DNA of 64,000 nt from Asterias rubens (lineage: Eukaryota): the NCBI RefSeq assembly GCF_902459465.1, contig NC_047069.1:12276001-12340000 (forward strand), given 5' to 3'. Below the pieces are notes generated by a model, which saw nothing but the letters and a program-made list of their open reading frames with translations, was not told where the DNA came from and ran no database searches. Positions within the stretch are counted from its first letter, which is position 1. Each line of letters opens with the position of its first letter. Both the position numbers and the translations under genes were made by a program. Below are positions 1,359-17,039 of this stretch, in pieces.

Positions 1359-4300
1359 TCGTATTTATCCCGCTGTCGTCCATTACCAAAGACAGATTGC
1401 TTGTACATCAATAATATGTTGGCTCTTTTTTCAGGAAACTGATGCCAATTTGCGGGAGACCTGAGTTCAAAGAGTTTAACCACAACCTGCTTGCTGAAAG
1501 ATGATGGGGAGGTGCAGTCCAAATACTGTGGCAGAAAAAAAGAAATGATTCCTGCATTAATACAAAAATTGCATTGAATCTTTAACACTTCACGTTGGAG
1601 GATGTGTACATCTGCTAAATTTTTCTTAAAATGGCCAGTACGGTAGACGGTCTTGTTCACCACAAACAACTTTTGGAGCCCATTTTTTTTCCAGTCAGTC
1701 GGAATGTTGAGATTATTATTCACCAGTACTGAGTATACAGTGCTAACACACATCTGTGTATGGGTAAAAATCAAAATTAATATTCTTTATCCCCGATGCA
1801 AATTTAACATCTCTTATAGGTAATTTCTCAATAAAATATGAAAAGACTTCTAGCTAGAAGTCTTTTATTCCTATCTGAAAGCACACAAATTCGTTCAACA
1901 AGGAGAGCTGTTGATAGAATAAAACATTGTGAGAAATGGCTCCCTCTGAAGTAACTAAGTTTTTGAGAAAAAAACAAATAATAAAAGACTTCAGTTGAAG
2001 CCTGTATGCGTGAAATCACACAAATTCGTTAAAACAAGGGTGCTTATTCTTTCATCATTTTCTCGCAACTTCGATGACCAATTGAGCCCAAAGTTTCACA
2101 GGCTTGTTATTTTATGCGTATGATGGGATACACCAAGTGAAAACACTGGTCTTTGACAGTTACCAAATGTGCACAGTGCCTTTAATCATGTTGACATGCT
2201 CCGAGGCGTTGAACATGGCACTAGTAACAAACTAAACAAGTACAATTGTATCCACAAACTAAAAAATAAGAAACAGAATTACAGAAATATGAGTACAAAT
2301 TCTTAAAAACATTCCACCTGTTAGTAAAACGTGCAACTCGATAAATTGAATTCCTGAAGTATTAAAAATGTAATTTGATTTTAAAAGTCTAATTAATTGA
2401 AAGATTTGTAACAACTGCAAAGATGACACTTTTTTTCATACCATAAATACATCATAATTGTATGATGTGAGCGAAAGTACGACCGTTGTCTTGCCGATGT
2501 ACATCACATTGTTTAAAGTGACCTTTAGCATTTTGCCCACCCTTAGGCTTTCAGCGCGGAAGACGGATTTGGCGGATTGTCCAGAATCAAACAGCTTCGA
2601 CATTAAGTATTGAAAACTCTGTTGGTTTCAAATAGAAAGAAAAAAGACTATTACAAAAATAGGAAATCATGTGTTTATTTCAGGAGCTTTACAGAAATAA
2701 TACAGTTTTGTCGAGCAAGTCTTCCGGGTATAATTCGATCTTCCAGAACCAAGTTGGTCTCTTTTGAGTTTTTGTGTGTGCAATTCTGTCATGTCTGTGT
2801 ATACAAATACTTTAGTTGAACATACATGTAGTTTATGGCTTTAAAATAAGAATTGTATTGAGTGGGAAACAAGTTTGGCCATAAAATTAATTTTTTTTTT
2901 ACAAATCCCCAAAAGAAAAAATAAGAAAAACATGGACCTAAAAGTTGACCTTCGTATCCAGTTATTTGAAAGCAATTCATAATTCAACCATCAAGTCAAC
3001 AACATTCCCATTGCTTTCACTTATTTTGTTAAGTGTTGGTTTCTCTTCGGTGCTTTACACAGGGTTAGCATGAAACAAGTATAGTTGGTAAGACATCTAG
3101 TCAAGTGATGCAGTGAGCGATTTTTCTTGTACTTTGACAGAGCAAAATACTACACAAAATGCAACAGTTGCTACTAAAAAATCCCCATTTGCTACTCAAT
3201 ACTAGCATTCAGTGTGCAAAATAAATTAGCTGTATATTTGTTGCTAAGAAAATTTGCTGGACAAATTTGTTCCCTGTAGGGTGTTGTGGCCGAGCGGTTA
3301 AGAGCATCAAATTCAAGTTCTGGTGGTTAAGTCACCGGAGTGTGGGTTCGAATCCCGGTCGTGACACTTGTGTCCCTGAGCAAGATGCTTTACAATAATT
3401 GCTTCTCTCCACCCAGGGGTATAAATGGGTACCTTTGAGGGTCGAGGTTATTATTGTATTTGAAAAAGCCTTCTGAGTGCTCAGGCTGTATACTCCGCAG
3501 GGAGCGGAGAAAGATTAAAGGAATGTTATTGGCCTAATGACCAGGGCACAAATGTATATAGCCCATTAATATGGTTATTGTAAAGTGTGCTAATGTATGT
3601 TCCAACTAGTTTTTATTATTATTATTATTCCCTATGCTGCTTACCTGAACTGAGATATCTAAACGCTTTTTGATTACATAATCAATGAAATTCTCTACTA
3701 CTGTGGAATATTTGTCTTCAAAACGATCTCTCCATGAAGATGTTTTCTCACAAAAATACTAAGGATAGAAAAGAAGGAAAGACAAAAAACACTGACAATT
3801 ATGCATGAGATTACTCTTGAGTAAAATGATGTTTTATAACAACACTTTTCCTTTTAATTTTCTCTACGGCTTAGAAGGCAAGGTCTCCATTTTGGGCGAT
3901 TGTCAAAGACCAGTATCCTCACTTGGTATGCCCCAATATATGCATAAAATAATAAACCTGTGAAAATTTGGGCTCATTTGGTCATCGAAGTTGCAAGAGA
4001 ATAATCAAAGAATAAAAACACCAGTGAAATTAAACTGAAAATATTTAATTTATACCTTCTTGAAACCTTGGTAATACAGCTCCACAATATCAAGTTTCTC
4101 CCTGCCCGTGGCATCCTGGAATGTAACCGACATAGAGGGGCTCATCTCTCTACCAATGCAATCTGACTTTTTATCTGGTTCAGAATTCTCTCGATTTCTT
4201 CTCGAGGAAGTCCGTTCAGCAGCTACTACCTCATAGGTATAATAGGGCTTCATGCCGTTGGTGACAACCACTGCGACCGTTGCCAATGTAGTTGGATTCA

Positions 4301-7300
4301 CGTATACTACGATAGGCTGCGGTAACATTTGATTGCAATTGATGCGAAAGTTTGCAAACGTTTCCTCTGAAAGCGTGAAGAAAAATCTATTTAAAAAACT
4401 GGGCTGCTTGCTTTGTGCATGTTATAGCAATCAACATCTTTTTTTTTAACTCATTGTTTTGTACAGAAATGTAAATGTTATGTAAAAGGAGTAGGTCTCA
4501 TAACTCAAACCTAGTCCCTAATACCTTGCAGGAAAATACTGAATATTGATTAATTTTTGGAAATACCAAAGTTATTCCCTCCCTTTAAAGCCATTGGACA
4601 ATTTTGGTACAGAAAAAAAAAAAAAAAGTTCACAGATTTACAAATAACTTACAGGGTTTGCAGAAGGTAATGGTGAAAGACTTCTCTTGACATATTACTC
4701 CATGAAATGCATTACTTTTTGAGAAAACACTAAAACATGTCAATTCTCGATATCGAGAATTACGGATTTATTTTAATCACATGTCATGACATGGCAAAAC
4801 GTGCAGACTCCGATGACTGATTGAGCCTAAATTTTCACAGGTTTGTTATTTTATATAGAAGTTGTGATACACGAAGTGTGTGCCTTTGGAAAAAACTGTT
4901 TACCGAAAGTGTCCAATGGCTTTTAAGTAAGGAAAAGCTATAACAAGGGCCCAATTTCATAAAACATGTAAGCAGCCGTTTTGTGCTTACGGAGCGGCCC
5001 TTAGCAGAATGTCTATTTCATAAAGCTGCTAACCATAAGCAAGGGTAAATGCTGGCTAAACCATAGTAACCACACAATTGACATAACAATGTTAAGCCAT
5101 GGTGAACGTGCATGCGCACATAACAAAATTCTGCTAACTGGAGAAATCTTGGTGAAATACGTTTGTGCGTGGGGAAATTTTTCTGTTACTAAGCACAAAC
5201 ATTTGCTTACCGGTAAGCAGCACAAACATTTGCTTACCGGTAAGCAGCTTTATGAAATTGGGCCCAGGTGTTTAAGAGCCGTGCTTCTAATTGGTGGCTA
5301 TGGCTTTGGCTGTTGCTAAGGCTGTTGCTAAGGGTAGCCTATGCCTCAACACCCATTCAAATAAGGATCCAACCACAGCCATAGCTGTTACCACTGTAAC
5401 GACTTTTTCACCTTGTTTTTAAATAGACACATCTTACAGCCAGAACCGAAGACATGTTTTCAATGAGGTCCTGTAACTTACCAGTACCCCTGGGCACTGA
5501 TGACGGGCAGAAGTTGTCCCATTTGTGGGGCTGCTCAGAGCAGGAACAATCAAAGTGCACTTTTCTGTAAAAAAACACAACAAATTTTAGACAGTTATAA
5601 TGTATAAGTTTGTGGCCTGACACTTTGACCCTAGCAGAGTATTTCTCGAAGGCTAAAGCCCGGTTCATACTTCGCTTTGCGAATGCGAAGCGAATGTTGA
5701 CGCCACAAAATTCGCAACGAATTTCGCAGCAGTTCAGCTCTGCTCAACTCAATTGCGAAAGGAAAGTTGTGAAGTCAAATTCACGTCAAATTTGCTCGCG
5801 CATTCAGATTCGCAGGAAGTACGAGCCGGGCTTTATCGATCTATTAACACAGCAAACATAACAGGTATACTGGTGTGACAGAGGCAGAGGGACAGAGCAG
5901 GGAGAAACTGTGGATAAGGCACCTCAAGTCCATTCAATCAACCCATGCTCTGAACATCCATAAAAGGAAATGATTACTGACGGTTGGTCTACGCCTTCTC
6001 CTTTATCCAACCGATATCCAACTGTTATTAAGTCTGCCTCATTGCCTAACTATAGTTTACTTTTTTCTCTATATATATTCCCATGTTTCATTTTTTCCTT
6101 TGAGTTTCTAACCTCTTATGGTCCAATCAGCCCCTTCAATCTACTTGGGTCATTAAACTGAATGGATGATCTAATAAAGTTTTGTTTGGAAAAGGAATTA
6201 CATAGAGATAACAGGTGTTAGTTGTCAGATGAAAAGGATGTTCTATTCTAGCCGCTTTATTTAATGGAGCTTTCCCTTAATGCAGGCACGCTTAGACAAT
6301 TTTTAGAAAAATGGGTTTCCACACATCACACTAAACATGAGAATCACACAAAATTTTCCATAATGGACTAGACTTGAGTCTATATAGTTGAGGTCTATAC
6401 AAGTTTTTTTTTTTTACCCAGTGTATAGATCTAAACAGACAGTCCGGAGAGGAGGTAGATTCTGTATCATAGCAGCACTCAGATGACCTTCAGGGGTTAC
6501 GTAGAGGTCAGGGGTCACTCCTTGAACATCTGCAGCCTGTTCGCGTCTCACTTTGGTGTTCCTTTAGAGAAAAATAAACTTTTAAATGTCTTCAGCTTTC
6601 ACAAAAAATAGATAATAGTATAATTGTAACACAGGCAAGGGTCTAGTCTTCTGTTCAACCTCTTCCACAATCTAATGCTGAAAGAGGGCGCAATGATATG
6701 ACATGTCACAGCAGTTTGAGTAAACCCACCTGTCATGGCAGTAGGATGGGTGGCCCAACCCTCGTCGCCAGACTAAAGGAAGTACTCTTAAGGGTGCCCT
6801 TATCTTCTTCCCCAGAGCCTTGGTCTTGAGGTCGATCCAGTCCAGGAAGAGCCACCAGGGGTGCGGTTTCACAACGTCTTCAGACAATGTCATGGCAACA
6901 GATCCTGGAAGCTGGGTGCCATACCCAAACCTGTCACACACAAAAGATGAGAGGTGTCAGACCCAGTCAAAATGAAAAGAGAATTGTTTGAGAGGTACAA
7001 CCGACGGGGTGCGTTAAACCCAAATAGTAGCTGAGAATTGCTTCATTTTGTTTGAATATATTGAGTGTAAATGATAAGGCAAGTAGCCCGTGGAGTTTAC
7101 AAGTGAAATTAAAAAAGGCTTCCAACTCTAGAATTATTATAAGACAGACATTAGTTCTTATAAACACGTTTAACCAAGTACATGTACATGAAAAAAGGCC
7201 AGGAATTTCATTATTGAAAGGGCAAGGCCATTATAATTTTGCAAAGAGCACTTCCATTGGAAGATCTTAAAGTCAATGGGAAACTTTTAACGGGGCACCA

Positions 7301-10300
7301 AAAAACCAAGACCAGGAATAATAATAATAATAATAATAACGAGGTCTTATAGAGCGCACAAATCCACAAAAGTGCTCAGGGCGCTATTACAGAGAAAATA
7401 CAAACAAAAATAACAAAGAACAGATTAAATACAAAAGAACGGATCTATAGACATGAGGTGTGTTTTGAGAGATGTTTTGAAAGAGTGAATGGAAGTGGAT
7501 GTTTTGATGTGAAGAGGTAGTTGATTCCAGAGACGTGGTGCCGCAATAGAAAAAGATCTGTCCCCCCAGGTGCGATTAGACTTGATTTCTTGAAGAAGAT
7601 ATCCGTTAGCAGAACGAAGGTTGCGAGATGGTTTGTAGATGTTTAGCATGTCATGGATTTAAGCAGGTGCTTGCCCATTTAGAGATTTGAAAACAATGAG
7701 CAAGAGTTTATATATGAAATTTCCTTATTGAAAGGGCAAGGCCATTATAATTTTGCAAAGAGCACTTCCATTGGAAGATCTTGAAGTCAATGGGAAACTT
7801 TTAACGGGGCACCAACAAACCAAGACCAGGAGTTTCATGATTAAAAGCATTATTATTTTGCAAAGGGCACAACCATTGGAAAATCTTAAAGTCAATGGGA
7901 AACTTTTTGAAGGGCAACCAAGGCCAAGACCAGGGGCAACAGACCGAAGCCATGGCCTCCGTGGCCTGCGCCTAATTCCTGGCCTGTGAAAATCCGACAT
8001 GCTATTCGAGGAGGCAACAGGGGCAGAGGTTATAGCCTCCAGTGTTCTGCTCTTGGCCTTGGTGCCCCTTAAAATTTCAGTAGACTGTCAGATATTCCAA
8101 AAGAATTGCCCTTTCCAGAATACAAATGGCCTTGCCGTCTCAAAGAAGTGCTCGTTTTTGGTACCTTATGGAGACCAAGGACAAAACGTAAAAGGGGAAA
8201 CAAAAGAGCTCCATAGGGGAATATGGGGAAAAAAAGGAGTGCTCCACTAGGAGATTTGTGTACGAAGTCTTTGGGATACTTATAAGTGTAGGGACAAAGG
8301 GAAGAACAAAAGATAGCTCCACCAAGATGCACTTTTTAATGGGTGAACTTCCAGGCCTGCCGTTTTCTATGCAAGTCACGTTCCTCTTAAAGGGAAGGTA
8401 CACGTTTGGTAACTACTCAAAACAAATATTAACTTAAAAGCTGACTTGGTAATGAGCACTGGGGAGCTGTTGGTAGTATAAAACATTGTGAGAAACGACT
8501 CCCTCTGAAGTAACGTAGTTTTTTTAGAAAGAGGTAATTTCTCACTAAAATAATAAAAGACTTCTAGCTAGAAGTCTTTTATTCCTATCTGAAAGCACAC
8601 AAATTCGTCCAACAAGGGTGTTTTTTCTTTCATCATTTTCTCGCAACTCCGATGACCAACTGAGCTCAAATTTTAGCAGGCTTGTTTATATTTTATGCTT
8701 ATGATGGTATACACCAAGTGAGGACACTGGTCTTTGACAATTACCAACTCCGTACCTTCCCTTAAAAACAAACATCAGTCAAAAAAGACTTATCTACATG
8801 GTGTCACTGCAAAATATTGTTTATAATTTCATATCCAAACTGTGTTATTATTAAAATACCTTGCCATATGAAAGTTGAAAGCATTTTCAGCTGCTACCCC
8901 TTCACCAAGCATGGCTATTATCATGGAGAGATACAGCCCTACAAGGGCGCAGCGAGGTTGAAGTAACTTCTCCAGGCAAGCCCTCGCCTCCCTCAGCCAG
9001 GATCTATTACACTCCAAGGCACTCCGTGAACCCTGGTTCAATGGATCTTTGAGAATCAAAAACGCAAAACAAACTGTCTTTATCAATGAACGTATGAAGT
9101 CATGGCCACACATGGTGACTTCAAATGCATGCAACATAGGCCTCGAAATTAAGGGAAAAAATCCAAAAGACCACAGAACTTGTAGCAGAGAATCTTTACC
9201 GGACTTGGATTTTATTTACAAGATGGGAATTAAAATGAGCAGAGACTCGAATCAAAACGAGAACTAGGAAGAAACTATAAATAATTAGTAAACTTGCCGG
9301 TACAACCAGGTGTAAGTCTCTTTTGTGCAAGTGTTGGCTTTGAAAAGAGCCAGTGTTGTATCAACGTTTCGATTAAAAAGAGAACACTTTTATATCATCT
9401 TGAATGGTTTATTTGAACAGATACTAAGAGAAAATTTATTGCTCTTAGTATACTTTTTTCATTGTTTTAGGTTGTGTGTTGCACATAGAGACTCCTGCAT
9501 TATACACCATATAAATATCTCAAATTATTCTTATTATAGCTTTTTATAGAAATTGGAAGGTATGTAGGAATCAAATATAAACAGCGAATTTGCCCTCATT
9601 GTAATTTGGAGGTTGAAACTGAGATTCATTTTTTACTCAATTGTCCATTATACAGTGCTCTTAGGGAACAAATGCTTAACTTTGTGAGTGGAAATAATGC
9701 ACATTTATAGCTGTTTACTAACAGTGACAAATTTGAATTTCTTATGAGTTCTACAGATGATTCTATTATTAATTGCGTTGCCAAATTTGTCTTTTTATTT
9801 ATGAACTTAAAAGAAAAACATAAAGTCTGATTGCCCCTGTTGACTTTATTTTTCTCCTGCCAATGGAGTACTAAAAAATTCAGGTTTAAAATGTTGATGC
9901 AACCCTCCCCGGGATTAAGTGTTCCAACCTATCTTTTTAATACCGCTTTTTAGCTTTTTATGTCTTCTTCTATGGTCACCTTGCCAGTTAGTTTAGAATT
10001 TTAGCATAGTTAGGGTTAGAGGCGTCTGTCTCCTGAAAAGGTCAAAACTTTACCGATGCCAGCAGGGATAGGCCTATGTAATAAGTAATTAATTAGTTCT
10101 CCGTTGGCTGGACAGACGTATCCCCATACTTTTGTTTGGGCACTGGCCTGGTGACCAGTCTTTTTTCTTTGTCTTTTTCTTCCACTCTGTGCTTTTTAAC
10201 AAGTGTTCTGCGCCTCTGATCATTTTGTATGTAAGGGGCACAATATAAATTTTAATTATTATTATTATTATTATTATTCCAAGTTGGAATACAAAAATAT

Positions 10301-13300
10301 TAAAAAAATTAATAATTATTGTTATAATTTTTACCAGTTGGGCATCCAGCGTGACAATGTAGTAGAGATTCTACAGCGGCCAGCACTGCGTCTCTTTGAC
10401 CCTCCTCCTCCAGATAAGGGTCAAGCGTGTAGATACCTCTCAATGACCTATTGTCCGGAGAGCCCTCCATGGTCTGAGCATGCTCTGTAGTGGTTCTCCA
10501 TAGCTTCCCTGCCTGGATTGCCGAATGCCGGTCCATTAAACTGCAGAACAGATCAAATAATAGATCGCTAAATTAATGAAGACCCACCCACCAGTGCAAG
10601 TTCCTAGTATTGAATAACCCCTTTGTTGATATAAAAGTCGCCATATTGTAAACTGTATGCGCGTCTAATTGCGTACATCAAAGAAGCACGCAGCACGCAG
10701 CGTTCCAGGTTCGAATTTCTATGACACACGTATCCACACATACACTTACACGCTCACAGACGCCATGTTGTAGGTCAGATTTTGTAGGTCAGATAATCAA
10801 TACCGTCTATAGCAACGTTACGGGAAAGCTTCTTAAGAATGTCAGAGTTAGGCCACAAAAAGTCCGAAATTATGCATCCGTTTTAACGAGGGAGTGTTGT
10901 TTACATTGTCACCACTTTGGTCATTTCATTTAATGGATGAGCAGTTAATTTGCCTAGGGCATTCAGCAGCACAACTGATTTGTGCATGATCCAAATAAGA
11001 ACACTGTTTGGAAAAGCAATTACATGGAGATAACACGTGTAAGTTGCAAGACGAAAAGGATGTCTTTTTAGCCTCTTTCTTTAGAGGGGCATTCCAAAAA
11101 TTCAGGGCAGAAGTCCGGACAGCGACAGGTAAATAGGTTTTGAGTTTAATTTTAACCCAAAATATTCCACCTAAATGTGGAAGGTGAGGCAAGGGATCAC
11201 TATGCCATCCCCAAATTGTTTATTTTTTTTGCACGTTAAAGTGCTATAACAACGCCACGCCTGGTTCACATGCAAATTAACTGCTGCTAGATTTAAAGCA
11301 TCCTGAAGCTGTGGAAAGTTTAGGGCTCAATTTTATACAGCTGATTCAGCAGAAAAGATTGCTTAACAATTTTCTGCCAAGCAAGCAAAGGAGCAGGATA
11401 CCAGTCACAAATTGTATTTGTGACATGGTAACCTTATTCCAGTAAGCATAACGCTGCTATGCTAAGCTGTTTTTGTGTTTTTAAGCGGCTAAAAAGCAGC
11501 TGTATGAAATTGGGCCGTGATTGGAGATCCACTGACCCTTGATCATATGCAGAAGCTGCCAAAGCTAAAGACTGAAGAGTGAGTTTAGAAACCTCCAGTG
11601 GATAAAGGTTCCTTGTGGCTAGTTCTACGGCCTCGCGGTAAAACCGTCCAGCCGAGTCACATTGTCCGAAGCTGACTAGAAGTCGTCCGATGTCCGCCAG
11701 GATCATGGCTTTGTGACGTGCCCACAGGGTACTATGCTGGGTCTCTGATGAATCTTGGTCTGTTGATAAAAAGAATGAAAAAGAACAACTGAAATTTGCT
11801 GATCAGCAGAGTGTGGGTTCGAATCTCCAGCCATGACACTGGAGTCGTTAAGCAAGACACTTAACCATTGCTTCGTCCTTCGGATGGGACGTTAAGTTGT
11901 CCCATGTGTTATGTAACGCATGTAAAAGAACCCAGTGCACTTATCGAAAAGAGAATGGATTCGCCCCGGTGTTCCTGGTCCGATCGGCAGCAAAACCACA
12001 GCACCTTGTAAAGCATTACATGGTGCTATCAGAATTAGGTCTCATATTTCAAAACGTAGTCCCTTTTCTGGCAGGAAATACAGTATGTAACAGCGACAGG
12101 AGCATCACTGGGTGACGGACATGTGCGCTTTATAAGAAGCCACAATTTTTATTACTATTATTATCAGACTCAAGTTCAAGAGAATCGCCTCATCATCTCT
12201 GGCCTCACAGGTACCATTTCCTCCTTGGTGAAAAGAATCAGTTATAACCTAAGTGTCTTACTCAAGGACACAAGTGTCATGCCCGGGGATTCAAACCCAC
12301 ACCCTGTTGACTTAGCCACAAGCACTTGAGTCCTGTGCACTAGGCCACTCTGCCTAAACACACCAAAAAACTTTGGAGCATGAATCACATTTACAAGAAG
12401 GAAAAACCCCTTCTCCATTCCACTACCAATACCAAAATGTTACCTGCTGGATATTGCTGGATAACTTTCAGGAATGCTTCTTGAGCTCTTGTGCATCTAC
12501 CCCTAGCCCACCACACATACGCCAGCGCCAGATCAAAGCAGTGTTGTACTAAATTGGGATACCTGCACAAGAATACAGTCAAATACTCTATCATTACATA
12601 AAAATCATTGTGGCGTGTCATGTAGAGCACCGGATACAAGCTCTGGTGTTTGATCAGCAGAGTGTGGGTTCGAGTTCCGGTCGTGACACTTGTGTCCTTA
12701 TAAGCAAGACACTTAATCATGATTGCTTCGTAAAGTTGGGGAGGTAGAGGTAAGATACTCTGTTAACGTTACTACCAATTTTGATATGAACGAAACACAA
12801 TGCACGCCCTGTGTCCTTGGGCAAAACACTTCATAACAACAAGCTTCTCTTCACCCGGGGGTAAATGGGTACCTGGAGGGCAGAGTTGGTTCTTGTGACT
12901 GATTAGCTTAGTGCGCTACAGATTTGGCGGCACAGGCTGTATACTCCCCAGGGACCTGAGATGGTTTAAGAAATGATTTAAGGCCCAGTGACCAGAGGTA
13001 ATAATGATTAAGCGCCATGAGCCTCACTGCGTGATGGACCTGAGCGCTAAATAAGACGCCACTATTATTATTATTGTTATAGATATAAAAAACTAACCGT
13101 TTTTGCAGATATTGCTTGGCTTGAAAAACACTCAAATTAACCCTCCGCTGACGTTGACTTTCCTCTGATCTGGATTGTGTGCCAACGTTTGGACTGGAGT
13201 AGTGATGTGGTAGTGTCAAATTCAGGTAATGAGCAAGAGCTAGCATAGAAAAAAGACAAAGATACATTTAAAAATGTATACTATACGATAAGATAAGATC

Positions 13301-16300
13301 AACACAAATTTATTCAGCCAATCTTAAAAAGTTAAAAACCAAAAGATCGGAAATTGCACCTCAAGCTCTAACAAAATTACATTTCAAAACACTATAATAT
13401 TTTTTTTCTTAAATTGAACGTTAGCAGGAGAAAGCCAACCTAAGGACATCCTAGTTCCCATTGAAAGCAAGAACTACACGAGGATCTGTGGATTAATATG
13501 GCCGAGCGGTCTTGTTCGCCCAACTCAAGCTCTGGCGTTGTCAGCAGCACAGCGACGATTTAAATCTCAGTTGTGATGGCACAAAGATCCTTGCACAAGC
13601 CACATAACCATAACTGCTTTGTCCTTTGAATGGGACATAAAGTCACCGGTACCTGAGGAGTTTTTTTCTTATGTTGCCCATGGTAGCAAGCCTGTATACA
13701 GACAGATTTTAACCCAGACCAAAAAGTGCAATTGTGTGGGGTGTTGTTGCTGAGCAGTCTAGGGCGGTGGACTTAAATTCTGCAATTTACAGAATGAAAG
13801 TTCGAATTGTGGCCTGGTCAATCGCGACACTTATCTCCTTGAGCAAGTAACGTTATGAGCAAGGCACTTTATTAAAAATACTTCTTTCCACCAAGGAGTA
13901 CAAATGGGTACCAACGAGACCTGGGGAGTAACCTGCGATGGACTTGCATCCTGTCCAGGAGGAATAGAAATATTCTCAATCGTTTAGTGGCAAGGAAACC
14001 GGAAATAAATACCGACCTGGTGAGCCATATTGGCTCGGGACAGACTTTACTTTTAAATAGTGAAATTGAAATATGTTCACCATACCCCAAACCGCAGCAG
14101 TCTACACAAGTGGGGCTACCTTGCATCTCCGCTTTGTGCTTATGGTGAACCCAAGACGATGCGCCACATGATAGCTGACTGCCCACTCTCTCACTTTGAT
14201 GGTGGCACTGAAGCCCTTCACCTGGCTGAGGACCAAGCCATAAACTGGCTTACGGACTTTAAAGTGAGATCAGCGGAGCATACGACATCATCATCACCCC
14301 AAACTAGCTACACCAGGGAACTTACCCGCAATTTTCCAGTCAACTGAGGCCAAGTTCTGCAGGCTGACTGGAAGCATCCACTGGCCTTCCTCTGGGTGTC
14401 TTTCCGGAGGTGGGTTCATCATGTATGAACGCCAGTAGATTGCCACGTTGGTCCTCCAGAGGGATCTTGCATCTCGCCTTAGAATAAATGTCTTGATAGA
14501 AATTACCAAACAATAATAATATCCAGTTAATAAGTGTTTTCACATCCGAAGGGCATCTCAAAGCGCTTCCAACATTATTACCCCTGCAGCCAATTTCACA
14601 AAACGCTAGGATTAATCCTATCTCGAGACTGAGGATTAATCTTAAGGTCTGCATGCTACAGTAGGTTGGGACTCGTCCTAAGTCCTAAGATTAATCTAAA
14701 GTTTGGTGAAATCGAAGACTGGTCACAGGCCTTAAATAATTCCTTTAACCATCTCAGCTCTCTGGTGAGTATACAGCCTGTGCAACAAACATGTTGGACA
14801 ATTCGGACACAGCCTTTAACAAACAAGAACCATAATATGGAATAGGCTGAACATTTTGATTGAAATTGGCTAGTGATTATAAACTGCAACTTACCTTCAC
14901 ACCGTGTGGTGGCAGCAACACCTCCACCGTGTTCCACTCAATCAGTACCTCAAGCACAGCCAAGTTGTGACACAGCCAGCGTAGCTGTACAGCGGAAAGT
15001 CTGGCGCGGTCTCTATGCTGTGAAACTACAGGCTTTAAGCCTGGCGGCAAGGGCCCGCTCCTACTGGGACCCTTCTGCATGCAAAGCTCCATCAGGGTGG
15101 GTACTCTCTGTGATCGATCTGCACCTTCGACTGAAACAGATTTCAGTGAACAAAATGATGAAAGCTAAAAACAAACAATTTTAGAGGACACAGCAAACAA
15201 AATAATAATAATAATAATACTAACAGTATTTATAATGCGCCAAATTGTCAAAGGATACAAGGTGCTGAGAAAGAAAGAAAAGGGAAAAGACAGAACAAAG
15301 ATAAGACCAGCTACGAAGAGTCAAAAAGGTGGGTTTTGAGAGCACGTTTGAAGGCTGTGACACTGTTTGAGCTTCTGGTTAGGGTAGGTAGAGAATTCCA
15401 TAGTCGGGATGCAGCAATTGAAAATGCCCTGTCACCTGCAAGTTTATGGGTTTTGTGAACTGAAAGGGATTTACCAGTAGAAGAGCGAAGAGAGTAAGAG
15501 GATGTCTGGAGTGAAAGGAGAGAGGAGAGATAATCCGGGGCACAATGATTGAGGGATTTATATGTGTGGACCATTGTACGGAATTGAATGCGTTGGGCAA
15601 CTGGAAGCCAGTGTAATTGCTTGAGAAGTGGAGATGAGTGAGTGAATTTTCTACTTAGAAAAGAAGTGGTATCTCTGAAATGAGATTGGAAATAAATGAT
15701 TTGGTCTTTAAAAGTCAAGATGAGTGTCATCCTAACTGTAGGACCAGCCTATGTTTTTAATATCTCCTTGGACTTGTCCTAAGTCAGGGCTAGGCCTAAG
15801 TTCTTTGTGAAATCGACTCCTGGACTGTCAACACAAATCTAAAGATGTTATCATACATGTAGCAAAGCCAACATATCTTCCTCCCTGTGAGACCAACATC
15901 ACCTATTATGCAAAATTCTAAGGGTGAAAAGAGATGAATGACAAATAATAGACAAAACCTCAGGCCTGTTTTACCAATGTCTAAATCGCACTCAGTGTCG
16001 CTGCCTCTCATAAAGTGTTCCAGGAACTCAGTTCTCAGCATGTGTCTCATCCTTCGCCTCTGTATCTTAGTCTTACGTCTGCGATGTGTACCATCTTGAG
16101 TCGGTAGAGGTGTCTCTTCAACAAAACCAATCTCATCCTCACTGCTCGTGTCGCTCTCTTCACATGAGAAGTCTTCCTGAACTAGAAATCAGAGAGAGAT
16201 GAAACATTGTTGAATTGTAAAATAAAAACCATCGCAAATTTCATAGAGTTGCTTTTGAAGCACAAAAGAGTGCCTGAAAAAGGTTTGGATGAGCAAGAAT

Positions 16301-16873
16301 TAAGCAGGACCAGTTGCAAGTCACATATGTGACATAGTAGTTTTGCTGGTAAGTTTATTATGGTAAGCATATAATGGTTATGCTGAGCAGCTTTTTGTGT
16401 TTTTAAGCAGCTCCATTAAATTGGGTCCATAGAGCTCCTTAAGCCGAACAGAGTTGCTTTTAAAAGCAGAAATAAACATGATACTGGTCACAATTTGTAG
16501 ATATGTGACATGGTCGTTTGGCTACCAGTAACCTTATTTTGACGAGCATAATTTTGGTGTGCTTATAGCTACTCTATGAGGAGATATAACTTAGAAAAAT
16601 GATTTAAGAGACTCAGTCCTTACTTTCCAGCTCCGCAAACGCTTCCTCCTCAGTTTTAAAGCCATCATCAGCATCTCCCTGTCCAGATGCTGACTTAGTC
16701 TCCGATCCTCTGCCTCTGTCATGATTGGGAGCAGGGACAGAGATGGGTGACTGATCATTCTCTTTGGCATCTGCTGACAGGGCTAGCGAGATAGAACGGG
16801 CAAACTGGCCTTTTTTTTGTATTGCTGCTAACTGTGCAGCCGAGATATCACTGGATTCAAAGCCCTCGTCCAT
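1359..16873 (-). CDS. Uncharacterised ~964-aa protein: acidic N-terminus, BC-box/cullin-box-like motif, TPR-like repeats, beta-rich C-terminal half (15 coding exons; 3' end uncertain)
   Basis: Exons on the minus strand: 16873-16624, 16181-15975, 15130-14895, 14491-14326, 13239-13098, 12562-12444, 11759-11537, 10540-10335, 9118-8860, 6930-6730, 6561-6418, 5564-5482, 4366-4056, 2618-2442, 1525-1359. All are GT-AG bounded, and phases join into one open frame of 2891 nt. The acceptor at 9119 is weak. TPR-like segments: LALAYVWWARGRCTRAQEAFLKVIQQYP and AMILADIGRLLVSFGQCDSAGRFYREAVELA. The last exon ends either at a GTAAGT donor (1358) or reads through to TAA at 1355-1357. Confidence 0.85.
1818..2185 (+). 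mobile_element. MITE family C copy with an internal rearrangement
   Basis: It carries the central hairpin AAAAGACTTCTAGCTAGAAGTCTTTT. The sequence then jumps back at a CAAGG microhomology to the left-arm sequence and ends GTGCCTTTAA. Confidence 0.75.
3278..3612 (+). mobile_element. tRNA-Leu(CAA)-derived SINE
   Basis: A box TGGCCGAGCGG, anticodon-like TTCAAGTTCTGG, B box GGTTCGAATCC, central TCTCCACCCAGGGGTATAAATGGGTACC domain and ATT tail. The acceptor stem is not intact. Related copies or fragments: 1016-1293(-), 11790-12165, 12140-12365(-), 12605-13075, 13495-14055, 42020-42330, 45650-45860, 61330-61520(-). Confidence 0.8.
4584..4926. mobile_element. MITE family B
   Basis: TIRs TTAAAGCCATTGGACA ... 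TGTCCAATGGCTTTTAA. It is the reverse complement of 356-701. Confidence 0.8.
4947..5265. mobile_element. MITE family F (TIR GGGCCCAATTTCAT; Harbinger-like)
   Basis: TIRs GGGCCCAATTTCAT / ATGAAATTGGGCCC. It contains a perfect 27-bp tandem duplication (5194-5247). Related copies: 11323-11516, ~16290-16590, 24202-24451, 25051-25233, 36835-37053, ~49797-49990, 57130-57323, 59542-59733. The flanks resemble CWG, so the superfamily call is inference. Confidence 0.75.
5655..5833. mobile_element. Small MITE (TIR TAAAGCCCGGTTCATACTTC)
   Basis: Inverted ends TAAAGCCCGGTTCATACTTC / GAAGTACGAGCCGGGCTTTA. Confidence 0.7.
7199..7985. repeat. Repeat family E: ~115-bp units, interrupted by an L2
   Basis: Units at ~7199-7317, 7717-7830 and 7831-7930. 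Related sequence lies at ~27345-27400, 44330-44520 and 50687-50830. Confidence 0.75.
7318..7716 (-). mobile_element. 5'-truncated L2/CR1-clade LINE
   Basis: The ORF2 C-terminus reads WGDRSFSIAAPRLWNQLPLHIKTSTSIHSFKTSLKTHL. A 3' UTR and a (TTA)n tail follow. Confidence 0.85.
8387..8765 (+). mobile_element. MITE family C, full length
   Basis: TIRs TTAAAGGGAAGGTAC ... GTACCTTCCCTTAA. It has an A-type body with a different central palindrome, AATAAAAGACTTCTAGCTAGAAGTCTTTTATT. Confidence 0.85.
14056..14297 (+). mobile_element. Non-LTR retrotransposon 3' fragment with a degenerate CCHC knuckle (I/Ingi/RTEX-like)
   Basis: It encodes LHKWGYLASPLCAYGEPKTMRHMIADCP...AINWL and ends CATACGA(CAT)n. The clade assignment is inference. 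Confidence 0.7.
15200..15725 (-). mobile_element. 5'-truncated L2-clade LINE
   Basis: It encodes LHWLPVAQRIQFR...GDRAFSIAASRLWNSLP...FKRALKTHLF and has a (TTA)n tail. Confidence 0.88.
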
Positions 16874-17039
16874 CTGCAATGCAATTCAAACGAAATGGTA
16901 CGTATATTAAAAATGCTAATTTTTGTTTACGGAGTGAGTTATTGTTTTTGAGTTAACGGAGTGAGTTATTATTTTTTTTCATTTTCATATTCTGGATGTG
17001 AACCCAAGAACACTCTGATTCTAAGCAAACTGAATCACT

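What the first reader, a model, noticed from the sequence alone, without database searches (positions are those of the whole stretch)
1359..16873. Uncharacterised ~964-aa protein resembling an Elongin-BC/cullin E3 substrate receptor (BC-box + TPR + beta-rich domain)
Seen in sequence: 15 exons join in perfect phase, so this is a real, maintained gene. After an acidic, basic-cluster N-terminus comes VPTLMELCMQKGPSRSGPLPPGLK. This contains T-L-x3-C and, 9 residues later, PLPxxLK, resembling a compact BC-box plus cullin box of SOCS/VHL-box proteins. At least two TPR-like helices and a beta-strand-rich C-terminal ~400 aa follow. Established knowledge: N-terminal BC-box plus repeat domain is the layout of CRL2/CRL5 receptors such as APPBP2, ZYG11 and LRRC41. 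Inference: this is a lineage-restricted ubiquitin-ligase adaptor that I do not recognise as any named gene.
Basis: partly seen in the sequence, partly recalled or inferred. Interest (0 to 1): 0.7.

Follow-up and report, generated by a model that had tools for sequence, protein, structure and literature searches.

The report
Sea-star TPR–propeller protein with SOCS-like box
A real, transcribed sea-star gene encodes a roughly 1,267-residue protein of an unnamed, so far starfish-only four-gene family whose conserved N-terminal motif resembles the Elongin-C docking box of ubiquitin-ligase adaptors, but the binding has only weak computational support.

Summary
The gene is real and lies on the minus strand. 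But 1359 is a splice donor, not the gene's end. Five more exons lie left of the window, giving 21 coding exons and 1267 aa.

The main new result is a family. The same genome holds three intronless paralogues of 1170-1262 aa, collinear with this protein at about 28% identity. Database relatives are all unnamed proteins from the sea stars Asterias amurensis and Patiria miniata, plus one unidentified marine sample.

All ten sequences keep [VI]P-x-L-x-x-[LM]-[CS] followed by PG[LI], so the L-x3-C core is conserved. The "PLP" is not. Three tests give only modest support for an Elongin-C box:
- The strict BC-box consensus fails in the window protein (Gly at the last position).
- Pfam does not see a SOCS box, but a profile of this genome's own SOCS boxes finds the motif as its best match, in register.
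- A co-fold with Elongin C scored 0.44 against 0.00 for the controls, which the tool calls weak support.

The middle is a TPR-like helical repeat and the C-terminus is a beta-propeller. A cullin-ligase receptor is my leading reading, at about even odds.

The parts
16624..16873 (-). coding exon 1 (ATG at 16873; acidic, disordered N-terminus); an acceptor AG sits just before the ATG, so a 5'UTR exon lies upstream
   Evidence: RNA contigs X1 and X2; translation
15975..16181 (-). coding exon 2 (acidic run, basic cluster RRRKTKIQRRRMR)
   Evidence: joint 16181/16624
14895..15130 (-). coding exon 3: the conserved N-terminal box and the long helix that follows it
   Evidence: RNA contigs; 42% and 40% identical matches inside intronless paralogue ORFs
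15033..15104 (-). the motif VPTLMELCMQKGPSRSGPLPPGLK (residues 162-185): BC-box-like core plus a PLPPGLKPVV string
14326..14491 (-). coding exon 4
   Evidence: joints 14491/14895 and 13239/14326
13098..13239 (-). coding exon 5 (AALAH..L.LP motif, invariant in the family)
   Evidence: joint with cut +2
12444..12562 (-). coding exon 6 (CFDLALAYVWWARG; TPR-like)
   Evidence: weak TPR_6 match
11537..11759 (-). coding exon 7 (TPR-like)
   Evidence: also raw reads of X15; weak TPR_12 match
10335..10540 (-). coding exon 8
   Evidence: canonical splice sites and phase; collinear with the paralogues
8860..9046 (-). coding exon 9
6730..6930 (-). coding exon 10 (PWW, LPLVWRR motifs)
6418..6561 (-). coding exon 11
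5482..5564 (-). coding exon 12
   Evidence: weakest exon: short, little similarity to the paralogues
4056..4366 (-). coding exon 13
   Evidence: two ORF fragments from marine samples are 37-38% identical and share its 3' boundary
3645..3758 (-). coding exon 14
2442..2618 (-). coding exon 15 (start of the propeller region)
1359..1525 (-). coding exon 16; ends at donor GA|gtaagt. The gene goes on outside the window with exons at L007:8818-8940, 8336-8571, 6961-7078, 5111-5226 and 3772-4049 (stop)
   Evidence: genome-wide profile hit at C8:12269787-12270065

Best explanation
The gene encodes a ~1267-residue, probably nuclear or cytosolic protein. It has four parts: a disordered acidic/basic N-terminus; a short conserved box ([VI]P-x-L-x-x-[LM]-[CS]-phi, then phi-[PA]-P-G-[LI], then a long helix RL..phi.L.WLL); a TPR-like helical solenoid; and a C-terminal beta-propeller. 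The most likely mechanism is that of a substrate receptor of an Elongin B/C-cullin (CRL2 or CRL5) ubiquitin ligase. The box would dock on Elongin C and the nearby cullin, and the solenoid and propeller would hold a substrate. The gene is the only intron-bearing member of a fast-evolving four-gene family, seen so far only in sea stars. Shown: the gene, its transcription, the family, the motif's conservation and the propeller fold. Inferred: Elongin C or cullin binding, ligase function, localisation and substrates.
For: - RNA joins of exons 1-7 come from two studies.
- The contig length fits the model: 146 nt of 5'UTR, 3804 nt of CDS and ~273 nt of 3'UTR make 4224 nt.
- Listed variants in exons 3-7 run 7 synonymous to 3 non-synonymous.
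- Three intact intronless paralogues align over the full length.
- P163, L165, P182, G183, L197, W204 and L209 are invariant in nine full-length members, and Cys is kept in 9 of 10.
- The window protein and the parB clade fit the Cul2-box consensus PhiPxxPhixxxPhi, which PMC3355856 places 8-23 residues after a BC box. A true SOCS box of this genome reads NLPPGLRTYL, against PLPPGLKPVV here.
- hhalign of the family box against 18 SOCS boxes of this genome scored 20.2. One hundred column shuffles gave 8.3 +/- 1.7 with a maximum of 16.1. It is the best site across the whole family profile, 21.0 against 12.8 for the next.
- Co-folding exon 3 with Patiria Elongin C gave ipSAE 0.53, 0.43 and 0.44 (median 0.44), with a best control of 0.00. 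The runs agree in at least 37% of contacts, and the partner pLDDT was as low as 39. The tool's verdict is 'weak support': 51 of 78 solved complexes and 2 of 108 mismatched pairs reach the mark, but at 0.60 or under only 5 of those 78 do, as did all 4 mismatches that passed (of 180).
- The C-terminal 398 aa of a paralogue fold with pLDDT 74 and pTM 0.72. They match 7-9-bladed propellers at Z 13, including the Fbw7 and Cdc4 substrate-binding propellers.
Against: - The strict BC-box consensus fails in the window protein and the parA clade (Gly at C+4).
- The Cul5 LPxP is not conserved: the parA clade has Ala and parC is shifted.
- Pfam SOCS_box, VHL, Elongin_A and F-box models give nothing, even at E<=1.
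- A genome-wide SOCS_box scan hits 19 loci and none is from this family.
- A plain HMM of the genome's SOCS boxes does not rank the family boxes.
- The only PDB sequence match is non-significant: TCTE1, an LRR protein with a similar VPLLTELC helix that I do not know to bind Elongin (my own knowledge, not checked here).
- The box region has low pLDDT in both predictions.
- The co-fold gave no interface, used no Elongin B and may reflect memory of solved SOCS complexes.
- Exons 8-21 and the 3' end rest on homology and length, not on laid reads.
Confidence: 0.5

Rival explanations
1. The family is a TPR-propeller scaffold whose conserved N-terminal helix is a structural cap or binds some other partner. 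The likeness to a BC box is coincidental and the protein is not a cullin-ligase receptor.
For: - The BC-core motif alone occurs in 46% of shuffles.
- The strict consensus is not met.
- No Pfam or HMM detection.
- A similar VPLLTELC helix sits in TCTE1, which I do not know to bind Elongin (my own knowledge).
- In the co-fold score range 0.34-0.60 the calibration holds 5 true and 4 false pairs.
Against: - The motif and the following PG[LI] string are invariant across paralogues that are otherwise ~28% identical.
- The SOCS profile picks exactly this site out of ~1230 columns, in register.
- All three co-fold controls scored 0.00.
Confidence: 0.38
2. The box is an F-box-like or Elongin-A-like module that recruits Skp1/CUL1, or acts in a transcription-elongation complex, rather than a SOCS/VHL box.
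For: - The order of hydrophobic helix, a Pro-containing turn and a long helix also recalls F-box and Elongin A modules (my own knowledge).
- The basic cluster suggests a nuclear protein.
- Skp1 and Elongin C are both present in the genome.
Against: - No F-box or Elongin_A Pfam match at E<=1.
- The LPxE and C..W spacing of F-boxes is absent.
Confidence: 0.07
3. The window copy is a decaying or non-functional member, or its main transcript lacks the conserved C-terminus, so only the intronless paralogues carry the function.
For: - It has the longest branch in the family tree (1.69).
- Variants in exons 1-2 are mostly non-synonymous (7 synonymous to 10 non-synonymous).
- An alternative 3' splice path fits the contig length and ends ~20 nt after an AATAAA.
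Against: - The frame stays open through all 21 exons, with canonical splice sites.
- The gene is transcribed in several studies.
- Exons 3-7 run 7 synonymous to 3 non-synonymous.
- All 103 family-invariant residues are kept, including the C-terminal W..DG..CCI.
- Exon-13 homologues with the same exon boundary exist in two marine samples; one of them (ERZ26222911) also holds the P0004 relative.
Confidence: 0.05

Closest known systems
SOCS-box proteins (BC box + Cul5 box; e.g. ASB, SPSB, WSB1), substrate receptors of CRL5
   Same: The core x-L-x3-C is followed after a short linker by a Pro-containing phi-P-x-x-L-K string. The profile-profile alignment is in register with this genome's own SOCS boxes. 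There is a repeat-type substrate domain; WSB1 also has a propeller.
   Different: The box is N-terminal, not C-terminal. Pfam SOCS_box does not detect it. LPxP is not conserved in the family. The linker length varies from 6 to 14 residues.
VHL-box proteins with an N-terminal box (ZYG11/ZER1, LRR1, PRAME, ZSWIM8), receptors of CRL2
   Same: An N-terminal BC-like box is followed by a large repeat domain. The window protein and the parB clade fit the Cul2-box consensus PhiPxxPhixxxPhi quoted in PMC3355856.
   Different: The repeat domains differ: TPR-like plus propeller here, against LRR/ARM or SWIM there. There is no sequence similarity outside the motif. The parA and parC clades break the Cul2-box consensus.
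APPBP2
   Same: TPR-type helical repeats combined with a BC-box-type docking motif (my own knowledge).
   Different: No detectable homology. APPBP2 has no propeller and is about half the size. This was not tested beyond Pfam and PDB profile searches.
F-box/WD40 receptors (Fbw7, Cdc4)
   Same: A small adaptor-docking helix module plus a C-terminal 8-bladed-type propeller. These propellers are among the best structural matches (Z 12.4 and 11.9).
   Different: The docking module is not an F-box (no Pfam hit). Propeller similarity is generic, at 9-12% identity.

Membership tests
BC-box (Elongin C-binding) proteins | Consensus (A,P,S,T)-L-x3-(C,S,A)-x3-(A,I,L,V) | tested here: inconclusive
   The window protein reads T-L-M-E-L-C-M-Q-K-G, so the last position is Gly. 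The parA clade also has Gly. The parB clade and parC fit fully. P and L are invariant, and Cys is kept in 9 of 10.
BC-box (Elongin C-binding) proteins | Physical binding to Elongin C / Elongin BC | tested here: inconclusive
   Co-fold of exon 3 with Patiria Elongin C gave a median ipSAE of 0.44 against a best control of 0.00. The tool's verdict is 'weak support', and no interface was reported.
SOCS box (Pfam PF07525) | Match to the SOCS_box profile above its cut-off | tested here: not met
   No hit at E<=1 for exon 3 or the full-length paralogues. The genome-wide scan finds 19 SOCS boxes and none in this family. An HMM of the genome's own SOCS boxes does not rank the family boxes. Only hhalign gives a signal: score 20-21, P 0.0008 for the box alone and 0.019 for the full length.
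SOCS box / CRL5 receptors | Cul5 box with LPxP | tested here: not met
   The window protein has G-P-L-P-P-G-L-K. The parB clade has Q-V-P-P, the parA clade has Q-I-A-P and parC has S-K-I-P. Only PG[LI] is invariant.
VHL box / CRL2 receptors | Cul2 box PhiPxxPhixxxPhi, 8-23 residues after the BC box (PMC3355856) | tested here: inconclusive
   Met by the window protein (LPPGLKPVV, 6 residues after the box end) and by the parB clade (VPPGLIPRL). Not met by the parA clade (IAPGL...) or parC. The composite motif occurs in 3% of shuffles.
TPR repeat proteins | Pfam TPR match above the gathering score | tested here: not met
   Only sub-threshold hits: TPR_6 at 0.021, TPR_12 at 0.0086 and TPR_10 at 0.00093 in 3 of 8 members. 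AlphaFold shows paired helices across parB 196-540 at pLDDT 55-79. The region is TPR-like, and membership is not established.
Beta-propeller (WD40-like) domains | Closed multi-bladed all-beta fold | tested here: met
   The model of parA 865-1262 has pLDDT 74 and pTM 0.72 and is all-beta. VIA Z scores of 13.3-11 to 7-9-bladed propellers cover residues 8-398, and Foldseek agrees. There is no WD40 Pfam hit, so the fold is met but not the sequence family. The window copy was judged by alignment only.
F-box proteins | Pfam F-box / F-box-like match | tested here: not met
   No hit at E<=1.

The most novel reading that the evidence does not exclude
Sea stars have evolved their own fast-diverging family of Elongin BC-cullin substrate receptors with an architecture not described before (N-terminal SOCS/VHL-like box, TPR-like solenoid, C-terminal propeller). 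One ancestral intron-bearing gene (this one) was amplified by retrocopying into three intact intronless paralogues, possibly for lineage-specific (for example immune or reproductive) target recognition.
Probability: 0.3. Interest if true: 0.65.

Novelty: new variant of a known kind. Interest (0 to 1): 0.5.

Why it matters
If the box really docks on Elongin C, this would be a new class of cullin-RING ligase receptor and a taxon-restricted one. It would show how the ubiquitin system gains new substrate receptors, here by retrocopy amplification and rapid divergence, in a deuterostome lineage used for developmental and regeneration studies. Even without that, the work turns four "uncharacterized protein" entries into a defined family with a domain map, a corrected gene model and a short, mutable motif that can be tested directly. 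It does not bear on any long-standing open question.

Tried and rejected
- **Exhaustive HMMER search with exon 13.** It gave only two short ORF fragments. In hindsight this was a poor use of the single job.
- **Fetching the contig behind one fragment.** The 11,975-bp ENA contig has no DNA available.
- **First ab initio model.** It got exon 5 and the exon 6 acceptor wrong, because a repeat at 12624-12731 was read as coding. RNA corrected it.
- **Mixed alignment of fragments with full-length proteins (A2).** It was unusable as a profile.
- **ESM Atlas search by features.** All scores were under 0.8, so there is no lead.
- **Family profiles against PDB sequences.** Nothing was significant.
- **Full-length AlphaFold model of parB.** Mean pLDDT was 46. 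I used it only for secondary structure and a coarse propeller signal.
- **Metagenome scans.** The C-terminal alignment found one 1.2-kb contig.
- **Plain HMM of the genome's own SOCS boxes against six-frame ORFs.** It did not rank the family boxes.
- **Earlier findings by words.** Nothing related turned up.
- **Whole spliced protein.** It has no reference, so it was not sent to Pfam, homology, fold or atlas tools. It was analysed only inside scripts, and the intronless paralogues served as its proxies.
Full report
**What is there**

The window is from a sea-star genome. The gene lies on the minus strand. Logan RNA contigs from two studies were laid on 11000-16999: X2 record 4 (4224 nt) and X1 record 1 (3633 nt). 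They join seven coding exons:
- 16873-16624
- 16181-15975
- 15130-14895
- 14491-14326
- 13239-13098
- 12562-12444
- 11759-11537

Raw reads of X15 also support the 11759/12444 joint. The ATG at 16873 directly follows an acceptor AG, and 146 nt of contig lie upstream, so a 5'UTR exon sits beyond 16999. Among the variants that one search lists inside exons, exons 3-7 show 7 synonymous to 3 non-synonymous changes. The disordered exons 1-2 show 7 to 10. The folded part is therefore under constraint.

**The gene is longer than the finding**

Searching the window's own genome with exon 3 found two 40-42% identical matches inside uninterrupted ORFs of 1262 and 1200 aa. A family profile found a third ORF of 1170 aa, and it also hit the window gene exon by exon, including one exon left of the window. 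Aligning these paralogues to the window plus 10 kb of left flank (L007) shows that 1359 is a splice donor (GA|gtaagt). Five more exons follow, at L007:8818-8940, 8336-8571, 6961-7078, 5111-5226 and 3772-4049.

The resulting model has 21 coding exons and 1267 aa. All splice sites are GT-AG. It is collinear with the paralogues from end to end and keeps all 103 family-invariant residues.

The numbers add up: 146 nt of 5'UTR, 3804 nt of CDS and about 273 nt of 3'UTR make 4224 nt, the length of the X2 contig. Both contigs carry 2734-2735 nt after exon 7. RNA-type runs also hold the last-exon stretch.

One point stays open. Under this model the contigs end 34 nt inside an interspersed repeat, which is a natural place for an assembly to break. 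An alternative 3' path, with introns of 88 and 558 nt, gives the same length and ends about 20 nt after an AATAAA. That path would replace the conserved C-terminus. I could not lay more reads, so the conserved stop rests on homology.

**The family**

The genome has four members:
- this intron-bearing gene, on contig C8;
- three intact intronless genes, on C10, C19 and C18.

The window protein is about 28% identical to all the others over more than 1200 columns, and it has a long branch in the tree.

In a database of 5.8 billion proteins, the only relatives are "uncharacterized" proteins of Asterias amurensis (P0003, P0006) and Patiria miniata (P0005, P0007, P0008), plus one ORF from an ENA sample (P0004). 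That same sample also holds a fragment 37% identical to the window's exon 13, ending at the same exon boundary. A second exon-13-like fragment, from a TARA sample, shares that boundary. So the intron-bearing lineage probably exists in other species too.

No Pfam family passes its threshold. Only sub-threshold TPR models recur. No PDB sequence matches the family profile.

**Architecture**

A full-length AlphaFold model of paralogue parB is poor (mean pLDDT 46). It still shows these regions:
- a disordered N-terminus;
- a short helix over the box;
- a long helix after it;
- paired helices across residues 196-540 at pLDDT 55-79;
- a mixed middle region;
- a beta-rich C-terminus.

The C-terminal 398 residues of parA, folded alone, reach pLDDT 74 and pTM 0.72. 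They match 7-9-bladed beta-propellers at Z 13.3-11, including the Fbw7 and Cdc4 propellers (Foldseek agrees). In the window gene this domain is residues ~890-1267, mostly outside the window.

**The BC-box question**

Taken alone, the motif is weak. The core [STPA]-L-x3-C occurs in 46% of composition-matched shuffles. The strict BC-box consensus fails here because the last position is Gly. The core followed by a Cul2-box-like string occurs in 3% of shuffles.

Conservation adds weight. All ten sequences from four clades keep [VI]P-x-L-x-x-[LM]-[CS]-phi, then after 8-16 residues phi-[PA/I]-P-G-[LI], then RL..phi.L.WLL. P163, L165, P182, G183, L197, W204 and L209 are invariant.

The review PMC3355856 gives the Cul2 box as PhiPxxPhixxxPhi, 8-23 residues after the BC box, and LPPhiP as the Cul5 determinant. 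The window protein and the parB clade fit the Cul2 pattern. The parA and parC clades do not.

Pfam's SOCS_box model finds 19 loci in this genome and none from this family. A plain HMM of those SOCS boxes does not rank the family boxes either. A profile-profile comparison does give a signal:
- The family box against the 18 own-genome SOCS boxes scores 20.2 (P 0.0008), with the BC core and the Pro-containing string in register.
- One hundred column shuffles gave 8.3 +/- 1.7, with a maximum of 16.1.
- Against the whole 1232-column family profile, the SOCS profile's best site is exactly this box, at 21.0 against 12.8 for the next.

One genuine SOCS box of this genome reads NLPPGLRTYL, against PLPPGLKPVV here.

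**Co-fold**

I found the sea-star Elongin C gene and retrieved Patiria Elongin C, P0010. Co-folding it with the window's exon 3 peptide gave ipSAE 0.53, 0.43 and 0.44 (median 0.44). The best of three controls scored 0.00. The runs agree in at least 37% of contacts, and the partner pLDDT was as low as 39.

The tool calls this "weak support". The mark is reached by 51 of 78 solved complexes and 2 of 108 mismatched pairs. At 0.60 or under, however, only 5 of those 78 reach it, and so did all 4 mismatches that passed (of 180). No interface was given, my alignments were not used, and a pass may reflect memory of solved SOCS complexes. I read it as roughly a three-fold gain in odds.

**Verdict**

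I put about 0.5 on an Elongin C-docking cullin-ligase receptor. I put about 0.38 on a TPR-propeller scaffold whose N-terminal helix does something else. Small shares go to an F-box-like reading or a decaying copy.

It is best described as a new variant of a known kind: a candidate receptor with an undescribed domain combination, in a family seen so far only in sea stars. The spliced protein itself could not be sent to the search and fold tools because it has no reference, so the paralogues served as proxies.

Noticed in passing
L005:2902-6690 (-), L006:6276-9878 (+), L011:1987-5499 (-): Three intact intronless paralogues (1262, 1200 and 1170 aa) of the 21-exon window gene sit on other chromosomes. 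This pattern suggests old retrocopies that stayed functional. The parB orthologues are 96% identical in A. amurensis but only 42% in Patiria, so the family evolves fast.
   Followed up: partly
window 11800-12063, 12624-12731, 12843-12996, 14584-14703: Interspersed repeats in the introns reach very high depth in RNA runs (word depth up to ~27,000). They cause many chimeric joints and loose ends, for example 16472->11387 'goes back' and 14628/15802 on opposite strands. One repeat at 12624-12731 mimics coding sequence and misled the ab initio model.
   Followed up: partly
L007:3177-3533 (window -6823..-6467) and L007:2853-3065: A ~356-bp repeat starts 239 nt after the predicted stop. An AATAAA lies ~20 nt before window -7147, where an alternative two-intron 3' path would end with exactly the contig length. 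The true 3' end of the mRNA is undecided.
   Followed up: partly
L010:462-578 and 1465-1674 (-): This is the sea-star Elongin C gene. Its first coding exon is 98% identical to Patiria elongin-C (P0010). A second Skp1_POZ locus on C21 (L008/L009) is probably Skp1.
   Followed up: no
L023 (G000:C5:21121937-21122044): A genuine SOCS box of this genome carries NLPPGLRTYL instead of the usual LPLP, so sea-star Cul5 boxes tolerate the LPPGL variant seen in the window protein.
   Followed up: no
AlphaFold DB hits A0A6J8A118 and K1PVI8: Two uncharacterised proteins are the best structural matches to the family's propeller (E 5e-13 and 2e-6, 16-17% identity). I recall the accessions as bivalve (mussel and oyster), but the tool gave no organism. 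They could be distant relatives outside echinoderms. Their sequences could not be fetched.
   Followed up: no
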